Positions 1 to 8,970 of a DNA stretch of 64,000 bases are shown piece by piece. Positions within the stretch are counted from its first letter, which is position 1. Every line of letters begins with the position of its first letter. Below the pieces are notes generated by a model. That model was not told the DNA's origin, did not search any database, and was given only the letters and a program-made list of their open reading frames with translations. Both the position numbers and the translations under genes were made by a program. Origin of the DNA: Rebecca billardiae RCC1528 (taxonomy: Eukaryota; Protista; Haptophyta); contig OZ251227.1 in NCBI GenBank assembly GCA_965240325.2, positions 3,162,001 to 3,226,000 of the forward strand, in the 5' to 3' direction.

Positions 1-290
1 GCCTACGCGCCTCGGTCAGCTGCCAATAAGGCGCCACGGCCCACGCCGCAGCCGGTCCGGCGGACCGGCGAGCGCGCCCTTCGGCTTCCCTCCGTCGGGC
101 GTATGCCGGGCGCCGCAGCCCCGGCGCTCGCGTCTTGCGGCCAGCGTCTACTGTGATGAAGAACACTGTGGTCGTCCACCGCCGGGCCTGGTCCACCCCC
201 GCCCCGTGTCGTGGTCGCCGCTGCATGTAGCGTGGCTGCATGTAGACATCCTCGGCTGCTGTGAGTGTGACGCAGGCGCTGCGTCCCGCG

Positions 291-1207
291 TCACAGCACT
301 GATGAGTGAGAAGCTGTGCTGCAGGGAGGGGCCCATGTTTGCGTCCAGCATCGCGGCTGAGCTGTCAGCTTGGAACACGCCACTTGATGGCATCTGCCTG
401 CAGTAGAGGAATCAATCAGTCGCGAAGAGCGTCGCCGCCCCTGCGCCCGTCGCAGGATCCGCTGGTGAGCCAGTCTGAGCGCATAGGCCGCACCACCACC
501 GAACACAAAAGCGACGAGCGCGGCGGTCAGCGCAACCGGCTGCCACGTGCGCTTCGCGCCAATCGACTGCAGGAAGGCGAACATGCCCGCCGTCCCTCCC
601 TTGTATGCTACCGACTGCCAAAGAGCCGCGAGGGAGCCCTTGGTGACGCCGGCCGTGCCGAAGCCCAGCAGTGGCACGGCGACTGCACCTGCCAACACCG
701 CGATCGCCACCACTGCGACGATAAGGGCAGGACACCAACCGGTGGCAGGCTGAGTGTGCTCGGCACTGTCGTACGAGATCAAGAAGTGCTCCCAGGACTG
801 CCGCACTGGCGCATGGGCAGTCACGCGGTCGCGGATGGTGCCGAGCCACTGGTGGCCATGGCAGGTCAGATAATAACCGTGCGCCGAGCGTAGCGCCCAC
901 TTGCCGTTGGCGCAGCGCTCGAGCGTCCACTGCTCAAACTCACCGAGCGTCTCGCGGTCGGCAAGCACATGGCCACTTGCAAACGCCGTCAGCCACTGAT
1001 CGTAATGGGAGCGTAGCCCGATGCGAGCCGAAGTCTCGGAGAGCCACTCGAGCACGTGCGCCACTGCTCAGACGTGTGACCGTCCCCAAAGTGATTGCAC
1101 TGCACCAAGCCCGACGGGTGGGCGCACAGGGCGGGATGGCCTCGATGGGAGAATGAGGTCCTAGCCGCGCGTATGTAGCAGGCGCGTGGCACTGGCCCGA
1201 GCTCCAT
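291..1207 (-). CDS. Fascin-like beta-trefoil + ISG12/IFI27-like membrane protein; apparent frameshift near 1062 (pseudogene or sequence error)
   Basis: Fascin-type repeats IGLRSHYDQWLTA..EFEQWTLE and WALRSAHGYYLTC..WEHFLI in ORF 291-1064. A matching first repeat (YIRAA..LCAHPSGLVQCN..SEQW) lies in the ATG-1207 frame. A hydrophobic segment follows, then GFGTAGVTKGSLAALWQS..FAFLQSIGA (Ifi-6-16 motif). Confidence 0.6.
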
Positions 1208-1783
1208 TCCGGCTTAGCCTCGAGCGTGGATGAGGCGCTCCGAGCGGACGTGATCGGACCCGCCGGTCGGCCGGAGATGCTTGACCTTGTCCTTGAACCG
1301 GCGCGCGGGCGTGACCCCCCCGTTTGTTACCAAATCACTGGTATTGCTGACAGTTAATGACTGTGTCGCTGTGAGACGACAGACGTCATCTGATTCACTG
1401 ATCAATGCCCATTCTCAGATTCTGCTCGTACTGTCTACTGACTACTTCGGAGTAACAGTGAGAGCTTATAGAACTGACTGAGGGTCCGACTCACACCTCC
1501 AGCAACTGTCCGCTCTCGGACGCGGTGCTAAGAGCCGACGTAAGCCCGCGGACCCGGCGGTGGCCGGTCCCGGAGCCGGTGCCGCATTCGCAACGCGGCA
1601 CTCGATTTCGGCATGAGTGCCTTGTGAGTTGTGGCCCGGCGGCCCGTGCCAGCCCGCATGCACCGATTCGGCACGGTGGCAGAGGTGCCCACTGCCCAGT
1701 CCGGACAACGGACAAGGTGGCGCCGCGCGCGACCCCGAGCCCTGGCACCGCGGCTCGGCCGGGCAGCGCATCGCAGCGCCCGA

Positions 1784-3188
1784 TCAGAACGGCACGAACT
1801 CCTTGTCGATGATGTGCTTGTGCGAGCCCATCTTGCCGTGCGCGACCATCGAGCCGAGCGCGTCGACGATGATCCGGAGCGCCATCAGGCTGGTGATGTC
1901 GGAGACGTCGTACGGCGGCGAGACCTCGACGATCTCCATCCCGCACAGGCCCTCCTTCGCCACGAGCCCGACCAGCTTCAGCGCCTCGCGCGGCAGCAGG
2001 CCGCCCGGCTCGGGCCAGCCCGTGCCCGGCACGAACGCGGCCTCGAGTGAATCGATGTCGTAGCTGAGGTACACTGCGTCCGTGCCGTCCCACGCGCGCT
2101 CGAGCGCCATCTCGGCGACCTTGTCGATGCCGAGCTCCTCGACGTCGTCCATCGTGAAGACGTTCGTCCGCCTGTTCACAATCTCCTCGACCGCCGGGCG
2201 CGGCACCTGCCACCCGCCGATCCCGATCTGCACGAGGTTGAGCGGCGAGACGTTGGGCAGGTTGGTCGCGTGGAACCACGGCGTCGTGTGCATGCGCTCG
2301 TCGAGGTCCTTCTCCTGGATGTCCGCGTGGCGGTCGACGTGGATGATGCCGATCTTCTTGGTGGTGACCGACGCGAGCCCGCGCACGGTGGGGAAGCCGA
2401 TCGAGTGGTCGCCACCCTGCGAGCCGACGCGCCGTGCGGCGCGGCGCGGCGAGATGAGCGCTGGGGGCGCAGCGAGGGCAGGTGCGCGCGCGCGCGGCGC
2501 GCGCGTGCCATGATGATGGGGAGCGAGCCGGAGGCGGCGACGTGCGCGACCGCGTTGGAGATCTGGTCGAACGACTTCTCGAGGTTCGCCGGGATCGTGA
2601 ACACGTCGCCCGCGTCGCACAGCGTCATCTGCTCGCGCAGGTCGACGCCCATCTCGTAGTTGTACGGCGTGTAGAGAGCCGAGATGCGCCGGATGCCCTG
2701 CGGGCCGAAGCGGGTGCCCGAGCGGTAGGTGCAGCCGCCGTCGAACGGAACGCCAATCACCGTCGCGTCGTAGTCGCCGCACTTGTTCACGTCCTCGACT
2801 GGTCGCCGGCGGCGGCCGCGGCGAGCGCACGCGCCACACAGCGTCAGCGGGCGCGCGCATGCGGCGCGCGGAGGGAGCACGCGCGTCGGCGCGCGCGCGC
2901 GCGCGCACTGTAGGGCGCCTTCATGAAGCTGTTCAGGCCCGCAAAGTGCGGCAGCTCGCCGCGGCTGAAGGTTGGGATCGTCCTGTCCTCGATGCTCGAC
3001 GCGCCCGGCAGGCCGTACTCGAGGCCGCGCTTCAGCTCCTCCTCATACTTGGTCGTCGGGATCTCCGCCTCCTTCACGGCGGCCTTCCATCCCTTCGTCG
3101 ACGGCGCCGCCGGGTTCGGGTGATGCGGCCGCAGGCTGTCCCGGAGGACGCCGTTCGTCTTGCGCGAGAGCGGGACGAGGCGGCGCAT
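1784..3188 (-). CDS. gdmH: Ureohydrolase, guanidine hydrolase (GdmH)-type; exons 3188-2909, 2798-2509, 2416-1784
   Basis: Spliced product contains IPTFSRGELPHFAG, GTRFGPQGIRRISALYTPYNYEMGVDLREQ, GGDHSIGFP, DRHADIQEKDLDERMHTTPWFHATN, DIDS, PGTGWPEPGGLLPRE and EVSPPYD. These match, as recalled, the Synechocystis Sll1077/GdmH clade. Introns are 2908-2799 (GT-AG) and 2508-2417 (GC-AG). Confidence 0.88.
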
Positions 3189-3260
3189 GGCGAGACGCGC
3201 GTCGGGACGAAGGGAGGACGCCGCGGTGCGAGACGCGCGTTCAAACCTGGGACGACCAGA

Positions 3261-3295
3261 CGAAACCGGCTCGTACTTGTACAGCTACGGTTTCG
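3261..3295. promoter_or_regulatory. Dyad-symmetric element in the bidirectional promoter
   Basis: CGAAACCG-GCT-C-GTAC-TT-GTAC-AGC-TA-CGGTTTCG forms an imperfect 35-nt palindrome in the 248-bp gap between divergent ATGs at 3188 and 3437. Confidence 0.45.
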
Positions 3296-3436
3296 ACTTC
3301 AGGCTCGGCTTATTCCGCAAGGCGCCACCGTTGGCGTCGAGTCCGCCGCGCAAGGCCAGCGCACTGGCGGGCCGCGCGACCTTTGAAGGGCGACTCCGAT
3401 CGTCGTCCGCGAGGAAGCCGCCCCCGCCGCGCAAGC

Positions 3437-4399
3437 ATGGCCACGACGTCGACGGGCTCGGTGCTGTCGCGCGACGTGTGCATCGACGGCATCGCGGGCT
3501 GGGTGGCGGGCGCCGCCTCCATCTTCGCCAGCCAGCCGCTCGACACGGTCCTCACGCGGCTGCAGCAGGCGCCGCCGACCTCTCGGCCTGCGGCGGTCGC
3601 GCGCGAGGTGCGCGCGACGGGCGGCGTGCGCGCGCTGTGGCGCGGGGCGGCGCCGCTCGTCGGCGTCGTGCCGGTGCAGAACGCGATGCTCTTCGCGGGC
3701 TACGGCATGGGCGAGCGCTGCGCCAAGTACCTGACCCCGCCGCCTCCGGCGGGCGCGAGCGGCGCGGGCGCGCCTGCGGGCGGTCACTCGCTGCCCTACT
3801 TTGCGGCCGTGTTCGCCGGCGGCTGCTCGGGGGGCGTGATGCAGTCGTTCGTGGTCTCGCCGGTCGAGCTGGTCAAGGTGCAGCTGCAGCTCGGCCGCGG
3901 CACCGCCCAGCACGGCGGCGGCAGCGTGCTCGCGTGCGCGCACGAGGTGTACGCGACGGTCGGGGTGCCTGCGTTCTGGCGCGGGCTCTCCGCGACCCTC
4001 CTGCGCGACGGCGTGCCGCACGGCGTGTGGTTCGCGTCGTACGAGTGGTCGAAGCTCGGGCTGGAGGGCGCGAACCGGCGCGCCGGCGGGGCCGCGCCCG
4101 CGGACGCCGTGCCGCTCGTGTCGGGCGCGTTCGCCGCGACGGTCGCGTGGGCGGTCGGCTACCCGGCGGACATCATCAAGACTCGGATCCAGGGCGCGGC
4201 GATGCGCGCCGGCGGCGGCCCGGCGCCGAGCGTGCTCGGCACCGCGCGCGAGCTCGTGCGCGAGGCCGGGGGCAACGTGTGCGCCGCGCTGTACCGCGGC
4301 TTCGGCCTCAAGCTCGCGCGCGCCGTGCCGATGAACGCGCTCTCGTTTGTGGTGTACGAGCGCGTCAAGACGCAGCTCGAGCTGGCGTGGGCCGAGTAG
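3437..4399 (+). CDS. Mitochondrial carrier (SLC25), basic amino acid/carnitine-carrier-like
   Basis: Three carrier repeats (PLDTVLTRLQ, PVELVKVQLQ, PADIIKTRIQ) with LWRG/FWRG/LYRG motifs. Contact points LLRD and LARA are typical of amino-acid-type carriers. Confidence 0.9.
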   Translation: MATTSTGSVLSRDVCIDGIAGWVAGAASIFASQPLDTVLTRLQQAPPTSRPAAVAREVRATGGVRALWRGAAPLVGVVPVQNAMLFAGYGMGERCAKYLTPPPPAGASGAGAPAGGHSLPYFAAVFAGGCSGGVMQSFVVSPVELVKVQLQLGRGTAQHGGGSVLACAHEVYATVGVPAFWRGLSATLLRDGVPHGVWFASYEWSKLGLEGANRRAGGAAPADAVPLVSGAFAATVAWAVGYPADIIKTRIQGAAMRAGGGPAPSVLGTARELVREAGGNVCAALYRGFGLKLARAVPMNALSFVVYERVKTQLELAWAE

Positions 4400-4722
4400 T
4401 GACGGTCCCGGGGGCGCCCGGCTCCAGGGGCTGACAGTGTGCGCACCGTGCTCCGTGAGCGCCGAGACGCGACACACAACGGCGTGTCTCTTGCACTATG
4501 TAGTAATCGTGATGACCGTTGTCTAGGATCAGGCCGCTGTCAGTGTCGTGCTGAGCATTTTCTCAGCATCAGCACATATTCAAGCCCGCGGTTGAGCGGA
4601 GCGCCTCCTGATTGGACGATTTCTTTGATTCATGACCGATTGGACCACGACAGGCCGACGACGAAACTCGGCCGGTCGGGGCGCAGCAGGGCCGGCGGCA
4701 CTTGTTTGTATTCCCTCCAGCC

Positions 4723-6148
4723 ATGCTGAAGGGCCTCTTCGGCGGCGAGCCGCCCAAGCAGAAGGAGAAGAAGGGGAAGAGCGTGTCCTTCCGCGAGGAC
4801 CTCACGACGACGAGCGAGACAGCCGATCCGCCCGTCGGCCGGCGCCCGGCGCCACCGGCCCACCACGATGGCGACGGTCCGAACCTCGCGCCGCTCTCGC
4901 GCGACCTGCTCTCGGGCGGGTCCGAGCCGACGCTCAAGAAGCTGCGCACGGTGATGACGGACACTTCGGCGCTCATACCGATCAGCCAGCTCGAACTACT
5001 CGTGCTCATCGGCGAGGGCAACAACGACTTCGTCTGGAAGTGCAAGTGGAGCGGGCCGAACGCGCCGGCGTCGGTCGGCGCGACGGGCGGGCTCGTCGCG
5101 CTCAAGCAGCGCAAGGTGGTGGTCCGGCCGCACTCCGGCGGCAGCGCGGCGTCGGACAAGGCGCTGGGCGACCGCGAGCTCGCCGCGTTCGCCAAGGAGC
5201 TCCTCGTCCTCAAGTCGCTCTCGCACCCCAACATTGTCGCGTACATGGGGGCGACGCTTCTGAAGGCGGAGGACGGCCACGACGAGATCGCGATCGTGCA
5301 GGAGTTCGCGCCGTACGGCACGCTGCGCCCGCTGATCTACGAGCAGGCGAGCGTGATGCGCAGCTTCTCCGTCACCGACGGCGTGCGCTGGGCCCACCAG
5401 ATCGCGCTGGGCATGACCTTCCTCCACTCGTGCACGCCGCCGATTATTCACCGGAATCTCAAGCCTGAGAACATTCTCCTCGGCGCGCCCAACGGCACCG
5501 CCAAGATCGCCGACTTCGGGCTGATCACGTTCGAGAGCGAGTCGGCGCGGAAGCCCGCGCCGACGAGCGCCGCGTCGGAGGACCAGGTCTCCTCCAGCTT
5601 CGGCTCGCTGCACTACCTCGCGCCCGAGGTCTACCGCGGCGAGGGCTCGACACACAAGGCGGATGTGTACTCGTTCGGTGCGGGGGCCCGCGCGCGCGCG
5701 CGTGTGCTGCGTGGGCGTGCGCCGCGGGTGGTGGCGTGCGTGCGCGCGCACCGCGGCTGACGCGCGTCGGTTGGCGCCGCGCACCCTCTCCTCTCGCCTG
5801 TCCGCAGGCATGCTGCTCTTCGAGCTGCTGATGCGCCGCCCGGCGTTCCACGGCATGCTCGAGGGCGAGAACGTCGCGCACGGCGCGGCGCACGACGCGC
5901 TGCGGCCACCGATGCCGCACAACTGGCCGCTGCCCGTCAAGCAGACGGTGAAGCGCGCGTGGGATCCGTACCCGGCGACGCGCGCCGAGTTCGAAACAAT
6001 CTGCGAGGAGCTCGAGCGCTGGCTCGAGCCGGGGTCGGAGATCCTGAAGAAGCTGATCAGCTCGTCGCCCAAGACGCCGCTCGAGTACCTCGGCCACTAC
6101 TCGCTCTTCGGCAAGCATAACACCGACCGCAACCCGGGGAGCGGCTAG
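4723..6148 (+). CDS. TKL-family protein kinase (HRN catalytic loop, probable pseudokinase); intron 5678-5807
   Basis: VALK, HPNIV, IIHRNLKPENILL, KIADFG, YLAPE, ADVYSFG|MLLFELL, RP..WD..RAEF. Confidence 0.85.
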
Positions 6149-6574
6149 GCGGCTGTGCGCGGGCAGTGGCCGCGCGACGTTGGGCCAGGGCAGCTGATTG
6201 GTGATAGATTGAGCCGTGCACCCGGGCTGCTCAGCCGTGAGGCCCTGGTAGTGCGCTCGCCCCCCCCCCGCTCTATCGCCGCTGCCACCCGTGCGGGGCC
6301 GAGCCGCGGCACGGCGGACCGGCGTCGAGTCGGACCGCGGTCGACGATCTGCTTTCAAATTCAGCATCGTGTTTCTTCGTCGGAGCTTGACGATGACTGA
6401 TGTCGACTGATGACTACTGCTACGCCCGCGGGGCGTTCGGTAGTGGCACGCCAAACGCCCCCGGCCCCGGGCCCCCGGGCCCGGCGGGGCCGGCGGCCCG
6501 GCGGCGCGGGCGCCAAGCCGACTCTTCTCACTATCTCAGTAGTGATGACGACTCATCAGTAGCAGTCAGTTCAT

Positions 6575-7031
6575 AGAGAGAGAGAGAGAGAGACTGTCAG
6601 AGCCCCACTGGGGGGTGCGTGGCCCAAAATCGAACTTCCTGTCGTCTTGAGATGAGGCTCTCAAACTGTTCGGGATGTCAATCAATCAATATTCGCCTGA
6701 AATGAGCTGGGGTCACGCTGACAAGTTTTGCGAAAAAATGTCACATACTGGAGATATACGACCTCAATCTCGACGCGATCTCGGCAACATTAGTAGGGGA
6801 GATACACGATCTCCAAGGTGATCTCGCTACTTGCACCAGAATCGCACCGTCTAGATCACATTTTGGCAGTCTGAAATTGGCACAGGCGGATTCACTACAC
6901 CCTGGAATTAAGCCTAAACGAACTTAAACGGACTCAAACAGTTACAAACCGAGGAGATATTTCATATTTCGAGATTTCGGGAGATTGTGTCACTCGGGAG
7001 TGTAACGGTCGGAGCTCTGACCCCACCCCAC

Positions 7032-7085
<54 letters not shown>
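6575..7085. mobile_element. Possible MITE-like low-GC insert flanked by (GA)n tracts
   Basis: (GA)n at ~6575-6592 and ~7033-7085. Short inverted ends GTCAGAGCCCC (~6596) and GGAGCTCTGAC (~7011). The interior is much lower in GC than the genes. No clear TSD. Confidence 0.3.
7033..7085. repeat. (AG)n microsatellite
   Basis: About 26 AG units. Confidence 0.95.
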
Positions 7086-7086
<1 letters not shown>

Positions 7087-7389
7087 TGATGTTGATCTGT
7101 CGTGAGGCTGTGTCACATCATGAACAGTATAGCGTCACGTTCATCACCGTCTCACGTCCGCGTCCGTTCACGCGCCAGCTCGGAGTCGTCAGTGATGACT
7201 CTCTCACTCTCCGACAGAGTGCTAGACTGAGAGTGAGTGAGCTGTGAGAGTACTCTCGGACTGAGTACAGACTCCGTGATGATGATGACCGGACATTCGA
7301 CAGAGCAGTATAGTCGCTGCCTGACCGTTGGCGTCGCGTATTACTTAATACGACTACTACTTTCGCTGCTGGACCGCCGCTAGGAGTAT

Positions 7390-8970
7390 CTACTGCCAGG
7401 CTGCTGCCACGTCTGCAGCCCAAATACACCACGGGCGGTGCGTATGCCAGTCGCGCCGCTGGCACTCCGCGCTATGACGATATATATCCGCCGCCCCGGT
7501 CAGGACGCATATGGGACACGCACGATCGGACAGGCCGGGCACGCACGGCGCAGGGCACGCGTCAGTATCGAGGTCGTACGCCAGTTGCACAGCGCGCACA
7601 CGGCACTCGCGCGCCGCCGCATCGCCGCACCTGCAGTACAACACGGCCTTGCATTGCCCGCACCGACGGCCGCCACAGCCGCCGAACGCGGCGCACGCAC
7701 GCGTGTCTCGATGCAGCGGAGCGTGCCCGCGCTCGACAGCGTGCGGCAGCACGTGCTCCACCCACAGCTGCTGCACCGCGCCCGATTGCACGCCGCCGAA
7801 GCGCCCGTCCGCGGCAAGCTCGTACCCCAGCGGCAGCAGCTCCACAGCGCGCGCGCGCGCGGGCGCTGGGAAGAGGTGGTGGGTCTTGGGGCTCCACGGG
7901 CCAGCTGCGGCGACCATGGCCGCCGCGGCGCCGTGGTGCGGATCGAGGGCGAGCGTGGCGTAGGCCAGAGCGAGGGGCGACGACTTGCCATCGGCGTTGA
8001 GGGCGTTGGCGTCTGTGAGCGCGCGCAGCTGCGCCACCGCCTCCGCCTCGCTCAGCAGCTCGACGTGCTGCAGGGCCGTGCGCCAGCGCGACGCGCGGTC
8101 GAGCCAGGCAGAGATCTCGTTATCGGTCACCCGACTGGTCTCGCTATCGGTCACCCGACTGGTCTCGCACATAATTGCGCGCTCACCGAGATCGACCGTG
8201 CGCATCCCGCGCAGCGCTTGGGCCTTGCACAGCAGCTGCACCACCTGCAGCCGCTCAGCGGGCGTGGCGTCAGTGCGATTCGTGGGTATGCAGGCCGCGA
8301 AGGCCAGCAGAGGCATAGGACGCTCTGAGTGCGCGTAAGTCTGCGCAAGGACGTCAGTACTTGCACGCGCGCCGAGCAGCAGCTGCACGCAGGGTGCGTG
8401 CAGCTCGCGCACCGCAGACACGATCGGCGCCTGCGCGCCTTCCTCTCCGTTGATGCGGTTGACGTTTGCGCGCGCGTCGATCAGCAGCTGCACGCACTCG
8501 GCGTGGCCCTTTGCGCAGGCGACAGAAAGTGGACGGATCTTAAGGAGAGCATGCTGATCGACGCTTGCGCCTGCGTCGAGCAGGACGCGCACGCACTCCG
8601 CATGGCCATAATTGGACGCGATGTGGAGGGCCGCCATCATCGTGGGGCCGGCGATGGCATCCGTGTCGGCGTTCGCCTCGAGGAGAAGCTGCGCGCAAGC
8701 TGCATGACCGTCTATACATGCATGATGCAACGCGTTGGCTTGAAGCATGCTGTGCCCGTCCTTGACGTGAATGTCAGCGCCCGCCTCGAGGAGCAGCCGC
8801 GCGCACTCAGCCTGTCCGTTCCCGCATGCGCAGATGAGAGCGGTGCATCCGTCTGCGTCGAGGCGGTCGAGATTGCCGCCCAGTGCCAGGAGCGACTCGA
8901 GCTGATGCACATCGCCTGTAATGCACGCGTCCGCCATGTCCTGCGCTTGCGTCAGCTCCTCGCGAGTCAT
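7390..8970 (-). CDS. Ankyrin-repeat protein with C-terminal MYND zinc finger; intron 7630-7472
   Basis: About five ankyrin repeats (G.TALICAC.NG.AECARLLLEAGAD). Splicing restores CGQCKAVLYC|SAECQRRDWHTHRPWC. Contains a tandem 21-bp duplication (ETSRVTD x2). Confidence 0.85.
   Translation of the reverse strand: MTREELTQAQDMADACITGDVHQLESLLALGGNLDRLDADGCTALICACGNGQAECARLLLEAGADIHVKDGHSMLQANALHHACIDGHAACAQLLLEANADTDAIAGPTMMAALHIASNYGHAECVRVLLDAGASVDQHALLKIRPLSVACAKGHAECVQLLIDARANVNRINGEEGAQAPIVSAVRELHAPCVQLLLGARASTDVLAQTYAHSERPMPLLAFAACIPTNRTDATPAERLQVVQLLCKAQALRGMRTVDLGERAIMCETSRVTDSETSRVTDNEISAWLDRASRWRTALQHVELLSEAEAVAQLRALTDANALNADGKSSPLALAYATLALDPHHGAAAAMVAAAGPWSPKTHHLFPAPARARAVELLPLGYELAADGRFGGVQSGAVQQLWVEHVLPHAVERGHAPLHRDTRACAAFGGCGGRRCGQCKAVLYCRCGDAAARECRVRAVQLAYDLDTDACPAPCVPGLSDRACPICVLTGAADIYRHSAECQRRDWHTHRPWCIWAADVAAAWQ

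What the first reader, a model, noticed from the sequence alone, without database searches (positions are those of the whole stretch)
1784..4399. Candidate eukaryotic mitochondrial guanidine-assimilation module: GdmH-type hydrolase head-to-head with an SLC25 carrier
Seen: an intron-containing ureohydrolase with the N-terminal extension (GLEYGL..SI.DRTIPTFSRGELPH), DLDERMHTTPW in place of the usual HGT, and GTGWPEPGG. Its first residues (MRRLVPLSRKTNGVLR) are basic and non-acidic, like a mitochondrial presequence. An amino-acid-type mitochondrial carrier starts 248 bp away on the opposite strand. Known: bacterial GdmH is a Ni2+-dependent arginase-family enzyme that converts guanidine to urea and ammonia, usually with transporters and guanidine riboswitches. 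Inference: a bacterial-derived, domesticated guanidinase works in mitochondria, and a co-regulated carrier imports guanidinium as a nitrogen source. Caveats: head-to-head pairs are common in this window, algal homologues may already be noted, and no HypA/HypB-like nickel chaperones are present here.
Basis: partly seen in the sequence, partly recalled or inferred. Interest (0 to 1): 0.82.

Follow-up and report, generated by a model that had tools for sequence, protein, structure and literature searches.

The report
Algal guanidine hydrolase paired with carrier
A haptophyte alga carries a close copy of the bacterial nickel enzyme that splits guanidine into urea and ammonium, back to back with a mitochondrial-type transporter, and this pairing recurs in green picoalgae and diatoms, which suggests that marine algae can feed on guanidine.

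Summary
A three-exon gene on the minus strand (1784-3188) encodes a 400-aa arginase-family protein. Its start codon lies 248 bp from that of a 320-aa SLC25 carrier (3437-4399, plus strand).

The enzyme is an orthologue of the characterised guanidine hydrolase GdmH, not an agmatinase:
- It scores about three times higher against the two solved guanidinases than against any other ureohydrolase.
- It keeps the metal ligands and the two specificity residues, Thr97 and Trp305 in Synechocystis numbering.
- In 14 of 16 loci of its closest bacterial relatives, a guanidine-I riboswitch lies upstream.

The pairing is not chance. Orthologues of this carrier lie beside GdmH in Micromonas-type contigs, Bathycoccus, Chaetoceros and Seminavis. 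A Fuseless-family membrane protein and a sodium:solute symporter usually lie there too, and Bathycoccus adds a nickel-permease-like gene.

Several points remain open:
- Mitochondrial location is likely but not shown, because bacterial orthologues have similar basic N-termini.
- The carrier's substrate is unknown, and its binding-site motifs look amino-acid-like.
- There are no expression data; no RNA run was listed.

No held paper mentions a eukaryotic GdmH; algal copies are annotated as agmatinase. The scan had not noted this elsewhere.

The parts
1784..2416 (-). GdmH exon 3 with the TGA stop at 1786-1784. It holds the catalytic core: GGDHS, HVDRHAD, ERMHTTPW, SYDIDS, GTGWPEPGG and MEIVEV.
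   Evidence: Pfam arginase family E 2.7e-52. Scores 275.7 and 274.2 bits against solved guanidinases 7esr/7oi1 and 9fek, versus 102 bits for the next family. Motif positions.
2417..2508 (-). Intron 2, 92 nt, GC..AG.
   Evidence: The junction IIM|GGDHS is collinear with homologues.
2509..2798 (-). GdmH exon 2. It includes the GGCTYR motif with the Thr117 specificity residue.
   Evidence: Pfam arginase family E 2.4e-18; motif positions.
2799..2908 (-). Intron 1, 110 nt, GT..AG, phase 1.
   Evidence: The junction KAPY-I-EDVNK is collinear with P0017 and P0012.
2909..3188 (-). GdmH exon 1. It holds the basic N-terminus (21 aa before the conserved HHPNP) and the GdmH-specific N-terminal loop (GLEYGL...IPTFSRGELPH).
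   Evidence: In the Diacronema orthologue this region aligns with residues 7 onward of the Synechocystis GdmH chain. N-terminal comparison.
3189..3436 (.). 248-bp region between the two divergent start codons. It presumably holds the 5' UTRs and a shared promoter.
   Evidence: No Rfam match, and no guanidine riboswitch, in window 1-8000. Promoter sharing is inferred, not shown.
3437..4399 (+). Single-exon gene for a 320-aa SLC25 carrier of the SLC25A20/29-like (carnitine / basic amino acid) type.
   Evidence: Three Mito_carr repeats. The best database hits are algal proteins that JGI labels SLC25A20/29. Orthologues lie beside GdmH in other algae.

Best explanation
The minus-strand gene encodes a eukaryotic orthologue of the nickel-dependent guanidine hydrolase GdmH, which converts guanidine to urea and ammonium. 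It is transcribed divergently from a gene for an SLC25A20/29-like carrier, across a 248-bp region.

The pair is the local remnant of a gene neighbourhood conserved in marine algae: GdmH, this carrier, a Fuseless-family membrane protein and a sodium:solute symporter, plus a nickel-permease-like gene in Bathycoccus. The most likely working is a nitrogen-scavenging route:
1. Guanidine is taken up, or released inside the cell.
2. It reaches an organelle, probably the mitochondrial matrix, with the help of the carrier.
3. GdmH hydrolyses it there.
4. Urea and ammonium pass on to urease and to nitrogen assimilation.

Shown here: the gene model, orthology to GdmH including the specificity and metal residues, guanidine-riboswitch control of the nearest bacterial relatives, and conserved linkage to the carrier.

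Inferred: activity on guanidine, use of nickel, the compartment, co-regulation, and what the carrier moves.
For: Enzyme identity:
- Exon 3 scores 275.7 and 274.2 bits against Synechocystis GdmH (7esr/7oi1) and N. inopinata guanidinase (9fek). The next families score 102 bits (proclavaminate amidinohydrolase), then 93 and 86 bits (guanidinopropionase, guanidinobutyrase) and 82-74 bits (metformin hydrolase subunits, agmatinases).
- The full-length Diacronema orthologue scores 524 bits against GdmH versus 170 for the next family.
- The residues reported to set guanidine specificity, Thr97 and Trp305 (PMC11410670, read), correspond to T117 and W324 here. The Glu that aligns with Glu344 of the N. 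inopinata enzyme, named in that paper's figure legend, and all six metal ligands are also kept.
- Bacterial orthologues are 67-76% identical over the full length. In 14 of 16 such loci tested, a Guanidine-I riboswitch lies upstream on the same strand.
- Some of those loci also hold ABC importer genes, HupE/UreJ or UreH-like nickel permease genes, or urease genes.

Link to the carrier:
- The orthologous carrier (40-66% identical) is head-to-head with GdmH in Micromonas-type contigs (L086, L088-L094) and in Seminavis robusta (L171).
- It lies one or two genes away in Bathycoccus-type contigs (L103 and others), Chaetoceros tenuissimus (L087), and diatom-like contigs L124 and L126.
- Those same neighbouring carriers are among the best hits to the window's carrier in a 5.8-billion-protein database.

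Compartment:
- The partner is an SLC25-family protein.
- Eukaryotic GdmH N-termini are basic, nearly free of acidic residues, lack a signal-peptide-like hydrophobic core, and reach 40-60 aa in diatoms and Mamiellophyceae.
Against: - No enzyme assay, no localisation and no expression data exist; no RNA run was listed for this stretch.
- The 21-residue basic N-terminus is matched by 12-37-residue basic segments in proteobacterial orthologues (start codons there are my own calls). It need not be an added presequence.
- The pair is unlinked in the nearest sequenced relative Diacronema lutheri, in Pavlovales sp. CCMP2436 as seen from the carrier side and in Vitrella.
- The carrier has R-D on helix 4 and R on helix 6. 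From what I recall of the contact-point scheme, these mark carriers of amino-acid-like substrates with a carboxylate, which guanidinium lacks.
- No symporter, Fuseless, nickel-permease, urease or UreG gene lies in the 64-kb window.
- SLC25 proteins are not always mitochondrial.
Confidence: 0.6

Rival explanations
1. The enzyme is a guanidine hydrolase, but the carrier does not move guanidinium. It moves an amino-acid-like compound (arginine, homoarginine, ornithine, citrulline or a guanidino acid). The module would then be part of arginine / urea-cycle catabolism, in which guanidine arises inside the organelle and is detoxified or recycled.
For: The carrier belongs to the SLC25A20/29-like group by its database neighbours. 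It shows R-D on helix 4 (LLRDGVPHG) and R on helix 6 (LARAVPMNA), which by my recollection is the amino-acid carrier pattern. Guanidine is produced from homoarginine or arginine by 2-ODD-C23 hydroxylases in plants and algae (PMC11018352). In Phaeodactylum a gene annotated 'agmatinase' (Phatr3_J40880) is upregulated at night together with urease (PMC5156380); I did not check that gene's orthology to this one.
Against: A plasma-membrane-type sodium:solute symporter sits in the same cluster in many algae, which points to uptake from outside. Relatives of this carrier clade are reported to carry cationic substrates without a carboxylate; this is from my own knowledge and was not checked here.
Confidence: 0.25
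2. The enzyme works in the cytosol. The carrier neighbour reflects co-regulation of a pathway that crosses compartments, for example passing urea-cycle intermediates or ammonium-derived products into mitochondria.
For: The N-terminal basic segment is no longer than in bacterial orthologues. No targeting predictor could be run.
Against: Diatom, Bathycoccus and Micromonas-type orthologues have 40-60-residue basic N-termini, well beyond the bacterial ones. The Fuseless-family neighbour in L086 also starts with an Arg/Ser/Ala-rich stretch.
Confidence: 0.3
3. The gene is what databases call it: an agmatinase, or a hydrolase of another substituted guanidine, acting in polyamine or urea-cycle metabolism.
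For: Every source that gives this family a functional name calls it agmatinase. Diatom urea-cycle papers draw an agmatinase step (PMC7542463). N. inopinata guanidinase has a high Km for guanidine, and its authors raise the possibility of another substrate.
Against: Scores against solved agmatinases are about a third of those against the guanidinases. Thr97 and Trp305 equivalents are kept. NCBIfam agmatinase models are hit far below their cut-offs: 125 bits against a cut-off of 302, and 96 against 174. The nearest bacterial relatives are under guanidine-I riboswitches.
Confidence: 0.07
4. The head-to-head arrangement is a chance neighbour pair in a compact genome, with no functional meaning.
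For: The pair is not kept in Diacronema, Pavlovales sp. CCMP2436 or Vitrella.
Against: The same orthologous carrier lies beside GdmH in three distant algal groups: this haptophyte, Mamiellophyceae and diatoms. It often has the same head-to-head orientation, and the same further partners are present. For one particular gene among some ten thousand, repeated placement within about 10 kb is very unlikely by chance.
Confidence: 0.04

Closest known systems
Synechocystis sp. PCC 6803 GdmH (Sll1077; PDB 7OI1, 7ESR), a Ni2+-dependent guanidine hydrolase
   Same: It has the arginase fold with the extra N-terminal loop, all metal ligands, and the Thr97 and Trp305 equivalents. Both have the DLDERMH(T/C)xPW stretch where other family members have HG(T/S)P. 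Exon 3 gives a very high score (2.6e-81).
   Different: The window gene is nuclear, with two introns, no riboswitch and no GhaA/GhaB-type chaperone gene nearby. It has an extra HHPNP-containing N-terminal segment and a different C-terminal tail. Its neighbour is an SLC25 carrier instead of an ABC importer.
Nitrospira inopinata guanidinase (PDB 9FEK)
   Same: Same clade and same key residues, with a nearly equal score (274 bits). It has an N-terminal extension relative to the cyanobacterial enzyme, and its genome has no dedicated nickel chaperone. So the lack of HypA/HypB here is not disqualifying.
   Different: It is bacterial, riboswitch-controlled, and paired with an APC permease.
Riboswitch-controlled gdmH operons of Alpha- and Gammaproteobacteria (loci L002-L080)
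   Same: These are the closest non-eukaryotic relatives: 67-76% identity over the full length, with the shared HHP motif near the N-terminus.
   Different: They are operons with a Guanidine-I riboswitch and an NMT1-type ABC importer. Some also carry HupE/UreJ or UreH-like permease genes or urease genes. None of these is in the window.
Agmatinase (SpeB, human AGMAT), guanidinobutyrase, guanidinopropionase, metformin hydrolase
   Same: Same superfamily, with the same binuclear metal site.
   Different: Scores are about one third of those to GdmH. NCBIfam agmatinase models are hit far below their cut-offs. According to the paper read, guanidine specificity depends on the Thr/Trp pair.
SLC25A20 / SLC25A29-type mitochondrial carriers (carnitine-acylcarnitine and basic amino acid carriers)
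   Same: Three Mito_carr repeats. JGI labels the orthologues SLC25A20/29. Helix-4 and helix-6 motifs are TLLRD..P and RAVP.NA (the comparison with those carriers is from memory).
   Different: This is a separate algal orthologue group. Among the 120 hits listed it appears only in groups that the GdmH search also found (haptophytes, Tetraselmis, Mamiellophyceae, diatoms). The first signature motif reads PLDTVLTR, with Leu in place of the usual Lys/Arg. The substrate is unknown.
Nitrate- and urea-assimilation gene clusters of Mamiellophyceae and diatoms
   Same: The principle is the same: a nitrogen-source enzyme is clustered with its transporters in compact algal genomes. This comparison rests on my own knowledge and was not checked here.
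   Different: The gene set differs (GdmH, SLC25 carrier, Fuseless-family protein, SSS symporter). I found no paper that describes it.

Membership tests
GdmH (guanidine hydrolase clade of the ureohydrolase superfamily) | Arginase/ureohydrolase fold | tested here: met
   Pfam PF00491 matches exons 2 and 3 at E 2.4e-18 and 2.7e-52, covering profile positions 2-277 of 280.
GdmH (guanidine hydrolase clade of the ureohydrolase superfamily) | Six His/Asp ligands of the binuclear metal site | tested here: met
   H194 (GGDHS), D218/H220/D222 (HVDRHAD) and D310/D312 (SYDIDS) align with the conserved motifs of solved family members.
GdmH (guanidine hydrolase clade of the ureohydrolase superfamily) | Specificity residues Thr97 and Trp305 (Synechocystis numbering) | tested here: met
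   The paper read names these two residues. PDB chain numbering is native + 2, since Trp sits at chain position 307. The equivalents here are T117 (GGCTYR) and W324 (GTGWPEPGG). The first Thr of the bacterial TTY is Cys here, but that position is not Thr97.
GdmH (guanidine hydrolase clade of the ureohydrolase superfamily) | Closer to characterised guanidinases than to any other characterised ureohydrolase | tested here: met
   275.7 and 274.2 bits versus 102 for exon 3; 524 versus 170 bits for the full-length orthologue P0017.
GdmH (guanidine hydrolase clade of the ureohydrolase superfamily) | N-terminal loop of about 60 residues that is absent from ordinary arginases | tested here: met
   Residues 25 onward of P0017 align with residues 7 onward of the 7esr chain. 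The loop is described in PMC10927577. Pfam finds nothing in exon 1.
GdmH (guanidine hydrolase clade of the ureohydrolase superfamily) | Hydrolyses free guanidine and needs Ni2+ | not testable with these tools
   This needs an enzyme assay. Indirect support comes from guanidine riboswitches (14 of 16 loci) and nickel-permease genes next to close bacterial orthologues.
GdmH (guanidine hydrolase clade of the ureohydrolase superfamily) | Accessory nickel-insertion genes (GhaA/GhaB, HypA/HypB-like) nearby | tested here: inconclusive
   The window shows no UreG-like hit. HypA/HypB sequences were not at hand for a search. This is not a strict criterion, because N. inopinata has no such genes.
SLC25 mitochondrial carrier family | Three tandem repeats of about 100 residues, each with a Px[DE]xx[KR]x[KR]-type signature | tested here: met
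   Three Mito_carr stretches, E 2.3e-51. The signatures are PLDTVLTR, PVELVKVQ and PADIIKTR; the first two each depart from the consensus at one basic position.
SLC25 mitochondrial carrier family | Location in the inner mitochondrial membrane | not testable with these tools
   Assumed from family membership; some members sit in other organelles.
Conserved algal GdmH gene neighbourhood (defined here) | An orthologous SLC25 carrier within a few kb of GdmH | tested here: met
   248 bp here. The same holds in L086, L088-L094, L103-type contigs, L121/L122, L087, L124, L126 and L171.
Conserved algal GdmH gene neighbourhood (defined here) | A Fuseless-family protein and an SSS symporter adjacent | tested here: not met
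   tblastn finds neither in the 64-kb window. They may lie elsewhere in this genome.

The most novel reading that the evidence does not exclude
Abundant eukaryotic phytoplankton (Micromonas, Bathycoccus, diatoms, pavlovophyte haptophytes) share a dedicated guanidine-utilisation gene set. It comprises a GdmH enzyme working in mitochondria, its own SLC25 carrier, a Fuseless-family membrane protein of unknown role, a sodium:solute symporter for uptake and, in Bathycoccus, a nickel permease. If so, guanidine is an overlooked nitrogen source for eukaryotic primary producers. The 'agmatinase' drawn in algal urea-cycle schemes would be mis-assigned, and this SLC25 group and the Fuseless family would gain their first functional context.
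Probability: 0.45. Interest if true: 0.8.

Novelty: new variant of a known kind. Interest (0 to 1): 0.68.

Why it matters
Guanidine hydrolysis by GdmH has so far been described only in bacteria: cyanobacteria, comammox Nitrospira, and by inference marine Synechococcus and Prochlorococcus. The reviews I read treat eukaryotes only as producers of guanidine.

A highly conserved eukaryotic orthologue (80-90% identity across algal phyla over exon 3), embedded in a conserved transporter cluster, would add eukaryotic phytoplankton to the consumers of this nitrogen-rich compound. It would also change the annotation of a gene used in diatom urea-cycle models.

It gives simple tests: growth on guanidine, 15N uptake and enzyme assays. 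It supplies candidate functions for three uncharacterised membrane proteins, including an SLC25 carrier group and the Fuseless family. It also raises the question of how nickel is delivered to an organellar ureohydrolase in eukaryotes.

Tried and rejected
- **RNA evidence.** The look-up of sequencing runs listed no run for window:1500-4600. Splicing and co-expression rest on homology alone.
- **Riboswitch in the window.** None was found at E up to 1, as expected for a eukaryote.
- **Tree root and donor.** The only outgroup at hand, a paralogue in L167, gave a branch of length 10, and no cyanobacterial sequence was among the fetched loci. The tree shows only that the window groups with Diacronema-type sequences (support 95) and that the proteobacteria form one clade (99). 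It does not show who gave the gene to whom.
- **Carrier binding-site mapping.** The HMMER alignments to solved carriers were shifted by one repeat. I read the motifs by eye instead and mark that as memory-based.
- **The Bathycoccus 464-aa ORF.** Pfam and NCBIfam gave only sub-threshold HupE/UreJ hits. A phmmer search against ORFs of the bacterial gdmH loci gave a better but still modest link (E 4.2e-5).
- **Other pathway genes in the window.** Urease, UreG, Fuseless, SSS symporter and nickel-permease queries found nothing in the window.
- **Literature.** Funck et al. 2022 (Nature) is not held, so I cannot exclude that it mentions algal homologues. Nine searches and fourteen papers gave no mention of a eukaryotic GdmH. 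One broad search and a gene-ID search were wasted.
- **Presequence.** A simple charge and amphipathicity count did not separate the pavlovophyte N-termini from the bacterial ones.
Full report
**Observation.** The stretch 1784-4399 holds two divergent genes. On the minus strand, exons 3188-2909, 2798-2509 and 2416-1784 join into an open 1203-nt reading frame of 400 codons plus TGA. The introns are 110 nt (GT..AG) and 92 nt (GC..AG). It is collinear at 82-84% identity over 399-400 residues with an intronless metagenomic homologue (P0012) and with the annotated Diacronema lutheri protein (P0017), which fixes both splice junctions. Pfam places exons 2 and 3 in the arginase family and finds nothing in exon 1. 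On the plus strand, 3437-4399 is a single-exon gene for a 320-aa protein with three Mito_carr repeats. This exact protein is on record (P0202). The start codons are 248 bp apart. The window is 59-84% G+C. Notes by other agents call the genome a GC-rich pavlovophyte haptophyte. This fits my tree, where the window's enzyme groups with Diacronema (support 95), and it fits the carrier's best named hits: Chrysoculter rhomboideus at 85% and Diacronema at 65%.

**What the enzyme is.** Exon 3 alone scores 275.7 bits against Synechocystis Sll1077 (7esr/7oi1) and 274.2 bits against chain 9fek. One search identifies 9fek as the Nitrospira inopinata guanidinase. The next best solved protein scores 102 bits; guanidinopropionase, guanidinobutyrase, metformin hydrolase and agmatinases score 93-74 bits. 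For the full-length Diacronema orthologue the figures are 524 and 509 bits against 170. That alignment includes the N-terminal loop that sets GdmH apart from ordinary arginases. NCBIfam agmatinase models are hit far below their cut-offs.

Palatinszky et al. (PMC11410670) state that guanidine specificity in the Synechocystis enzyme depends on Thr97 and Trp305, and that the Nitrospira enzyme keeps both. In the printed alignments the only Trp of GTGWPEPGG lies at chain position 307, so chain numbering is native plus two. Thr97 is then the Thr directly before Tyr in TTYR. The window protein has T117 in GGCTYR and W324 in GTGWPEPGG. It also has the Glu of MEIVEV and the six metal ligands H194, D218, H220, D222, D310 and D312. 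I therefore file it as a member of the GdmH clade. Catalysis and metal use are still untested.

**Bacterial relatives.** A scan of one genome per prokaryotic species found the closest relatives in Alpha- and Gammaproteobacteria: 72-80% identity over exon 3 and 67-76% over the full length. I ran Rfam on 16 of these loci. Fourteen have a Guanidine-I riboswitch upstream on the same strand as the gene. In L004 the riboswitch is followed by an NMT1-type binding protein, a permease, an ABC ATPase and then the hydrolase. In L022, L150 and L148 a true HupE/UreJ nickel permease gene follows the hydrolase directly (E 1e-45 to 1e-54). In gammaproteobacterial loci a DsbD_2 (UreH-like) membrane gene does. 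In Acidithiobacillus ferrianus, ORFs that by their sequence look like ureC and ureG follow it. So the nearest relatives are guanidine-induced and sit beside nickel and urea functions.

In the tree the proteobacteria form one clade (support 99), and all eukaryotic sequences lie on the other side. The outgroup branch is far too long and no cyanobacterial sequence was in the set, so the donor and the direction of transfer stay open.

**Spread in eukaryotes.** The word-index search returned orthologues at 75-90% identity over exon 3. They come from diatoms (Chaetoceros, Fistulifera, Fragilaria, Seminavis, Cyclotella and others), Diacronema, Tetraselmis, Vitrella and Phaeothamnion, and from many marine metagenome clusters. 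Every functional name given is 'agmatinase'. One large metagenome cluster contains a Bathycoccus prasinos protein.

I fetched the surroundings of the orthologues and searched them with the window's carrier and with neighbours found along the way.

- **Head-to-head with GdmH.** An orthologue of the carrier has this arrangement in contigs L086/L092, L088/L089, L090/L091/L094 and L093 (GC 0.57-0.67), in L121/L122, and in the pennate diatom Seminavis robusta (L171). The L094 carrier is 93% identical to a Micromonas pusilla protein.
- **One or two genes away.** This holds in the Bathycoccus-type contigs (L097, L103, L105-L107, L110-L113, L115), in Chaetoceros tenuissimus (L087), and in the diatom-like contigs L124 and L126.
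- **Orthology.** These neighbouring carriers are among the best hits to the window's carrier in the whole protein collection.
- **Two further genes recur.** One is a small Fuseless-family (PF15993) membrane protein. The other is a 700-aa sodium:solute symporter, which lies head-to-head with GdmH in Chaetoceros and in the pavlovophyte-like contig L082.
- **Bathycoccus extra gene.** A 464-aa membrane ORF lies between the carrier and GdmH. It has sub-threshold HupE/UreJ hits at an H-x5-DH motif. Its C-terminal part matches the UreH-like genes of the bacterial gdmH loci (best E 4.2e-5).
- **Not universal.** Diacronema, Pavlovales sp. CCMP2436 and Vitrella have the genes apart. Fistulifera keeps only the Fuseless gene beside GdmH.

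Finding one particular orthologue group beside GdmH in a haptophyte, in Mamiellophyceae and in diatoms cannot reasonably be chance. The window holds only the carrier-GdmH pair; no symporter, Fuseless, permease, urease or UreG gene is found in its 64 kb.

**Compartment.** The eukaryotic proteins start with a segment that is basic and almost free of acidic residues, and that has no long hydrophobic run. This argues against a signal peptide, and so against plastid import in algae with complex plastids. In diatoms, Bathycoccus and Micromonas-type sequences the segment is 40-60 residues long.

In the window protein, however, it is only 21 residues before a conserved HHP(N/D)P motif. Proteobacterial orthologues have 12-37 equally basic residues at that place (their start codons are my own calls). 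The main argument for mitochondria is the conserved SLC25 partner. An unchecked note from the scan says that urease and UreG of this genome also have presequence-like N-termini. I put mitochondrial location at roughly 55-60%.

**What the carrier moves.** JGI labels the orthologues SLC25A20/29. The helix-4 motif TLLRD and the helix-6 motif RAVP.NA are, as I recall the contact-point scheme, those of carriers for amino-acid-like or carnitine-like substrates. That fits import of a cationic nitrogen compound, but it does not point to bare guanidinium. Arginine, homoarginine, ornithine, citrulline or guanidino acids are equally possible, and I list that as the main rival. Alignments to solved carriers were out of register and did not help.

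**Literature.** Reviews and primary papers on guanidine metabolism describe GdmH only in bacteria, and mention plants and algae only as producers of guanidine. Papers on the diatom urea cycle draw an agmatinase step; I did not test whether the genes they mean are orthologues of this one. The original Nature paper on GdmH is not held, so an earlier remark on algal homologues cannot be excluded. I found no description of the gene cluster. The scan's own notes hold nothing on guanidine or agmatinase.

**Verdict.** The enzyme assignment is right as far as sequence can show. The functional link to the carrier is real and wider than proposed. Compartment, substrate of the carrier, co-expression and origin remain to be shown. 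No RNA run was listed for this stretch.

Noticed in passing
L103:7662-9053 (minus strand), Bathycoccus-type metagenome contig; the same gene is in L105-L115: A 464-aa membrane ORF lies between the carrier and GdmH. It has an H-x5-DH motif (AHVLSGPDH), long acidic and Ser-rich loops, sub-threshold HupE/UreJ Pfam hits (E 0.012-0.018), and phmmer similarity to UreH-like genes of bacterial gdmH loci (E 4.2e-5). It is probably a nickel permease embedded in a eukaryotic GdmH cluster.
   Followed up: partly
L086:3360-4139, L087:9807-10436, L169:6625-7343, L103:5523-6434 and others: A small Fuseless-family (PF15993) membrane protein with two WRG.W..(M/W)D repeats is the most constant neighbour of algal GdmH. 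It is present even where the carrier is absent (Fistulifera). Its function is unknown, and it is not found in this window.
   Followed up: partly
L087:4737-7130, L103:3025-5154, L082:6310-7344, also L088, L090, L093, L122, L124, L125: A sodium:solute symporter of about 700 aa (PF00474) recurs next to algal GdmH. It is head-to-head with GdmH in Chaetoceros tenuissimus and in the pavlovophyte-like contig L082. It is a candidate uptake system for guanidine or urea. Its nearest solved relatives are choline transporters, and only weakly so.
   Followed up: partly
window 3111-3125 (residues 22-26, HHPNP) and the same place in loci L002-L080: A His-His-Pro motif preceded by Arg is conserved near the N-terminus of eukaryotic and proteobacterial GdmH. 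It does not appear in the aligned part of the Synechocystis chain. It could be structural or metal-related.
   Followed up: no
L002:6623-7042, L004:6643-7071, L075:6668-7123, L003 and L127:3128-3538: In alphaproteobacterial loci a 140-150-aa ORF with no Pfam match follows gdmH directly. In four of these loci (not checked in L004) it has a His-rich H.HGHDH stretch. It could be an undescribed nickel-handling helper.
   Followed up: no
L001 (JANNWD010000271.1, 1556 bp, labelled Bacteroidota MAG): The match to exon 3 spans 759 nt for 210 residues, so it is probably interrupted. This short contig may be eukaryotic DNA binned into a bacterial genome.
   Followed up: no
L081:12662-13723 (Diacronema lutheri): Two genes downstream of the Diacronema GdmH lies an AstE/AspA-family gene (succinylglutamate desuccinylase / aspartoacylase). 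This is another arginine-catabolism-type enzyme.
   Followed up: no
window 4723-6150, plus strand: The next gene downstream of the carrier looks like a protein kinase (HRNLKPENILL, DFG). It appears to be interrupted by a GC-rich intron at about 5680-5810.
   Followed up: no
window 2417-2508: Intron 2 of the GdmH gene uses a GC donor (GC..AG). Both introns are almost pure G+C with GCGCGC runs.
   Followed up: partly
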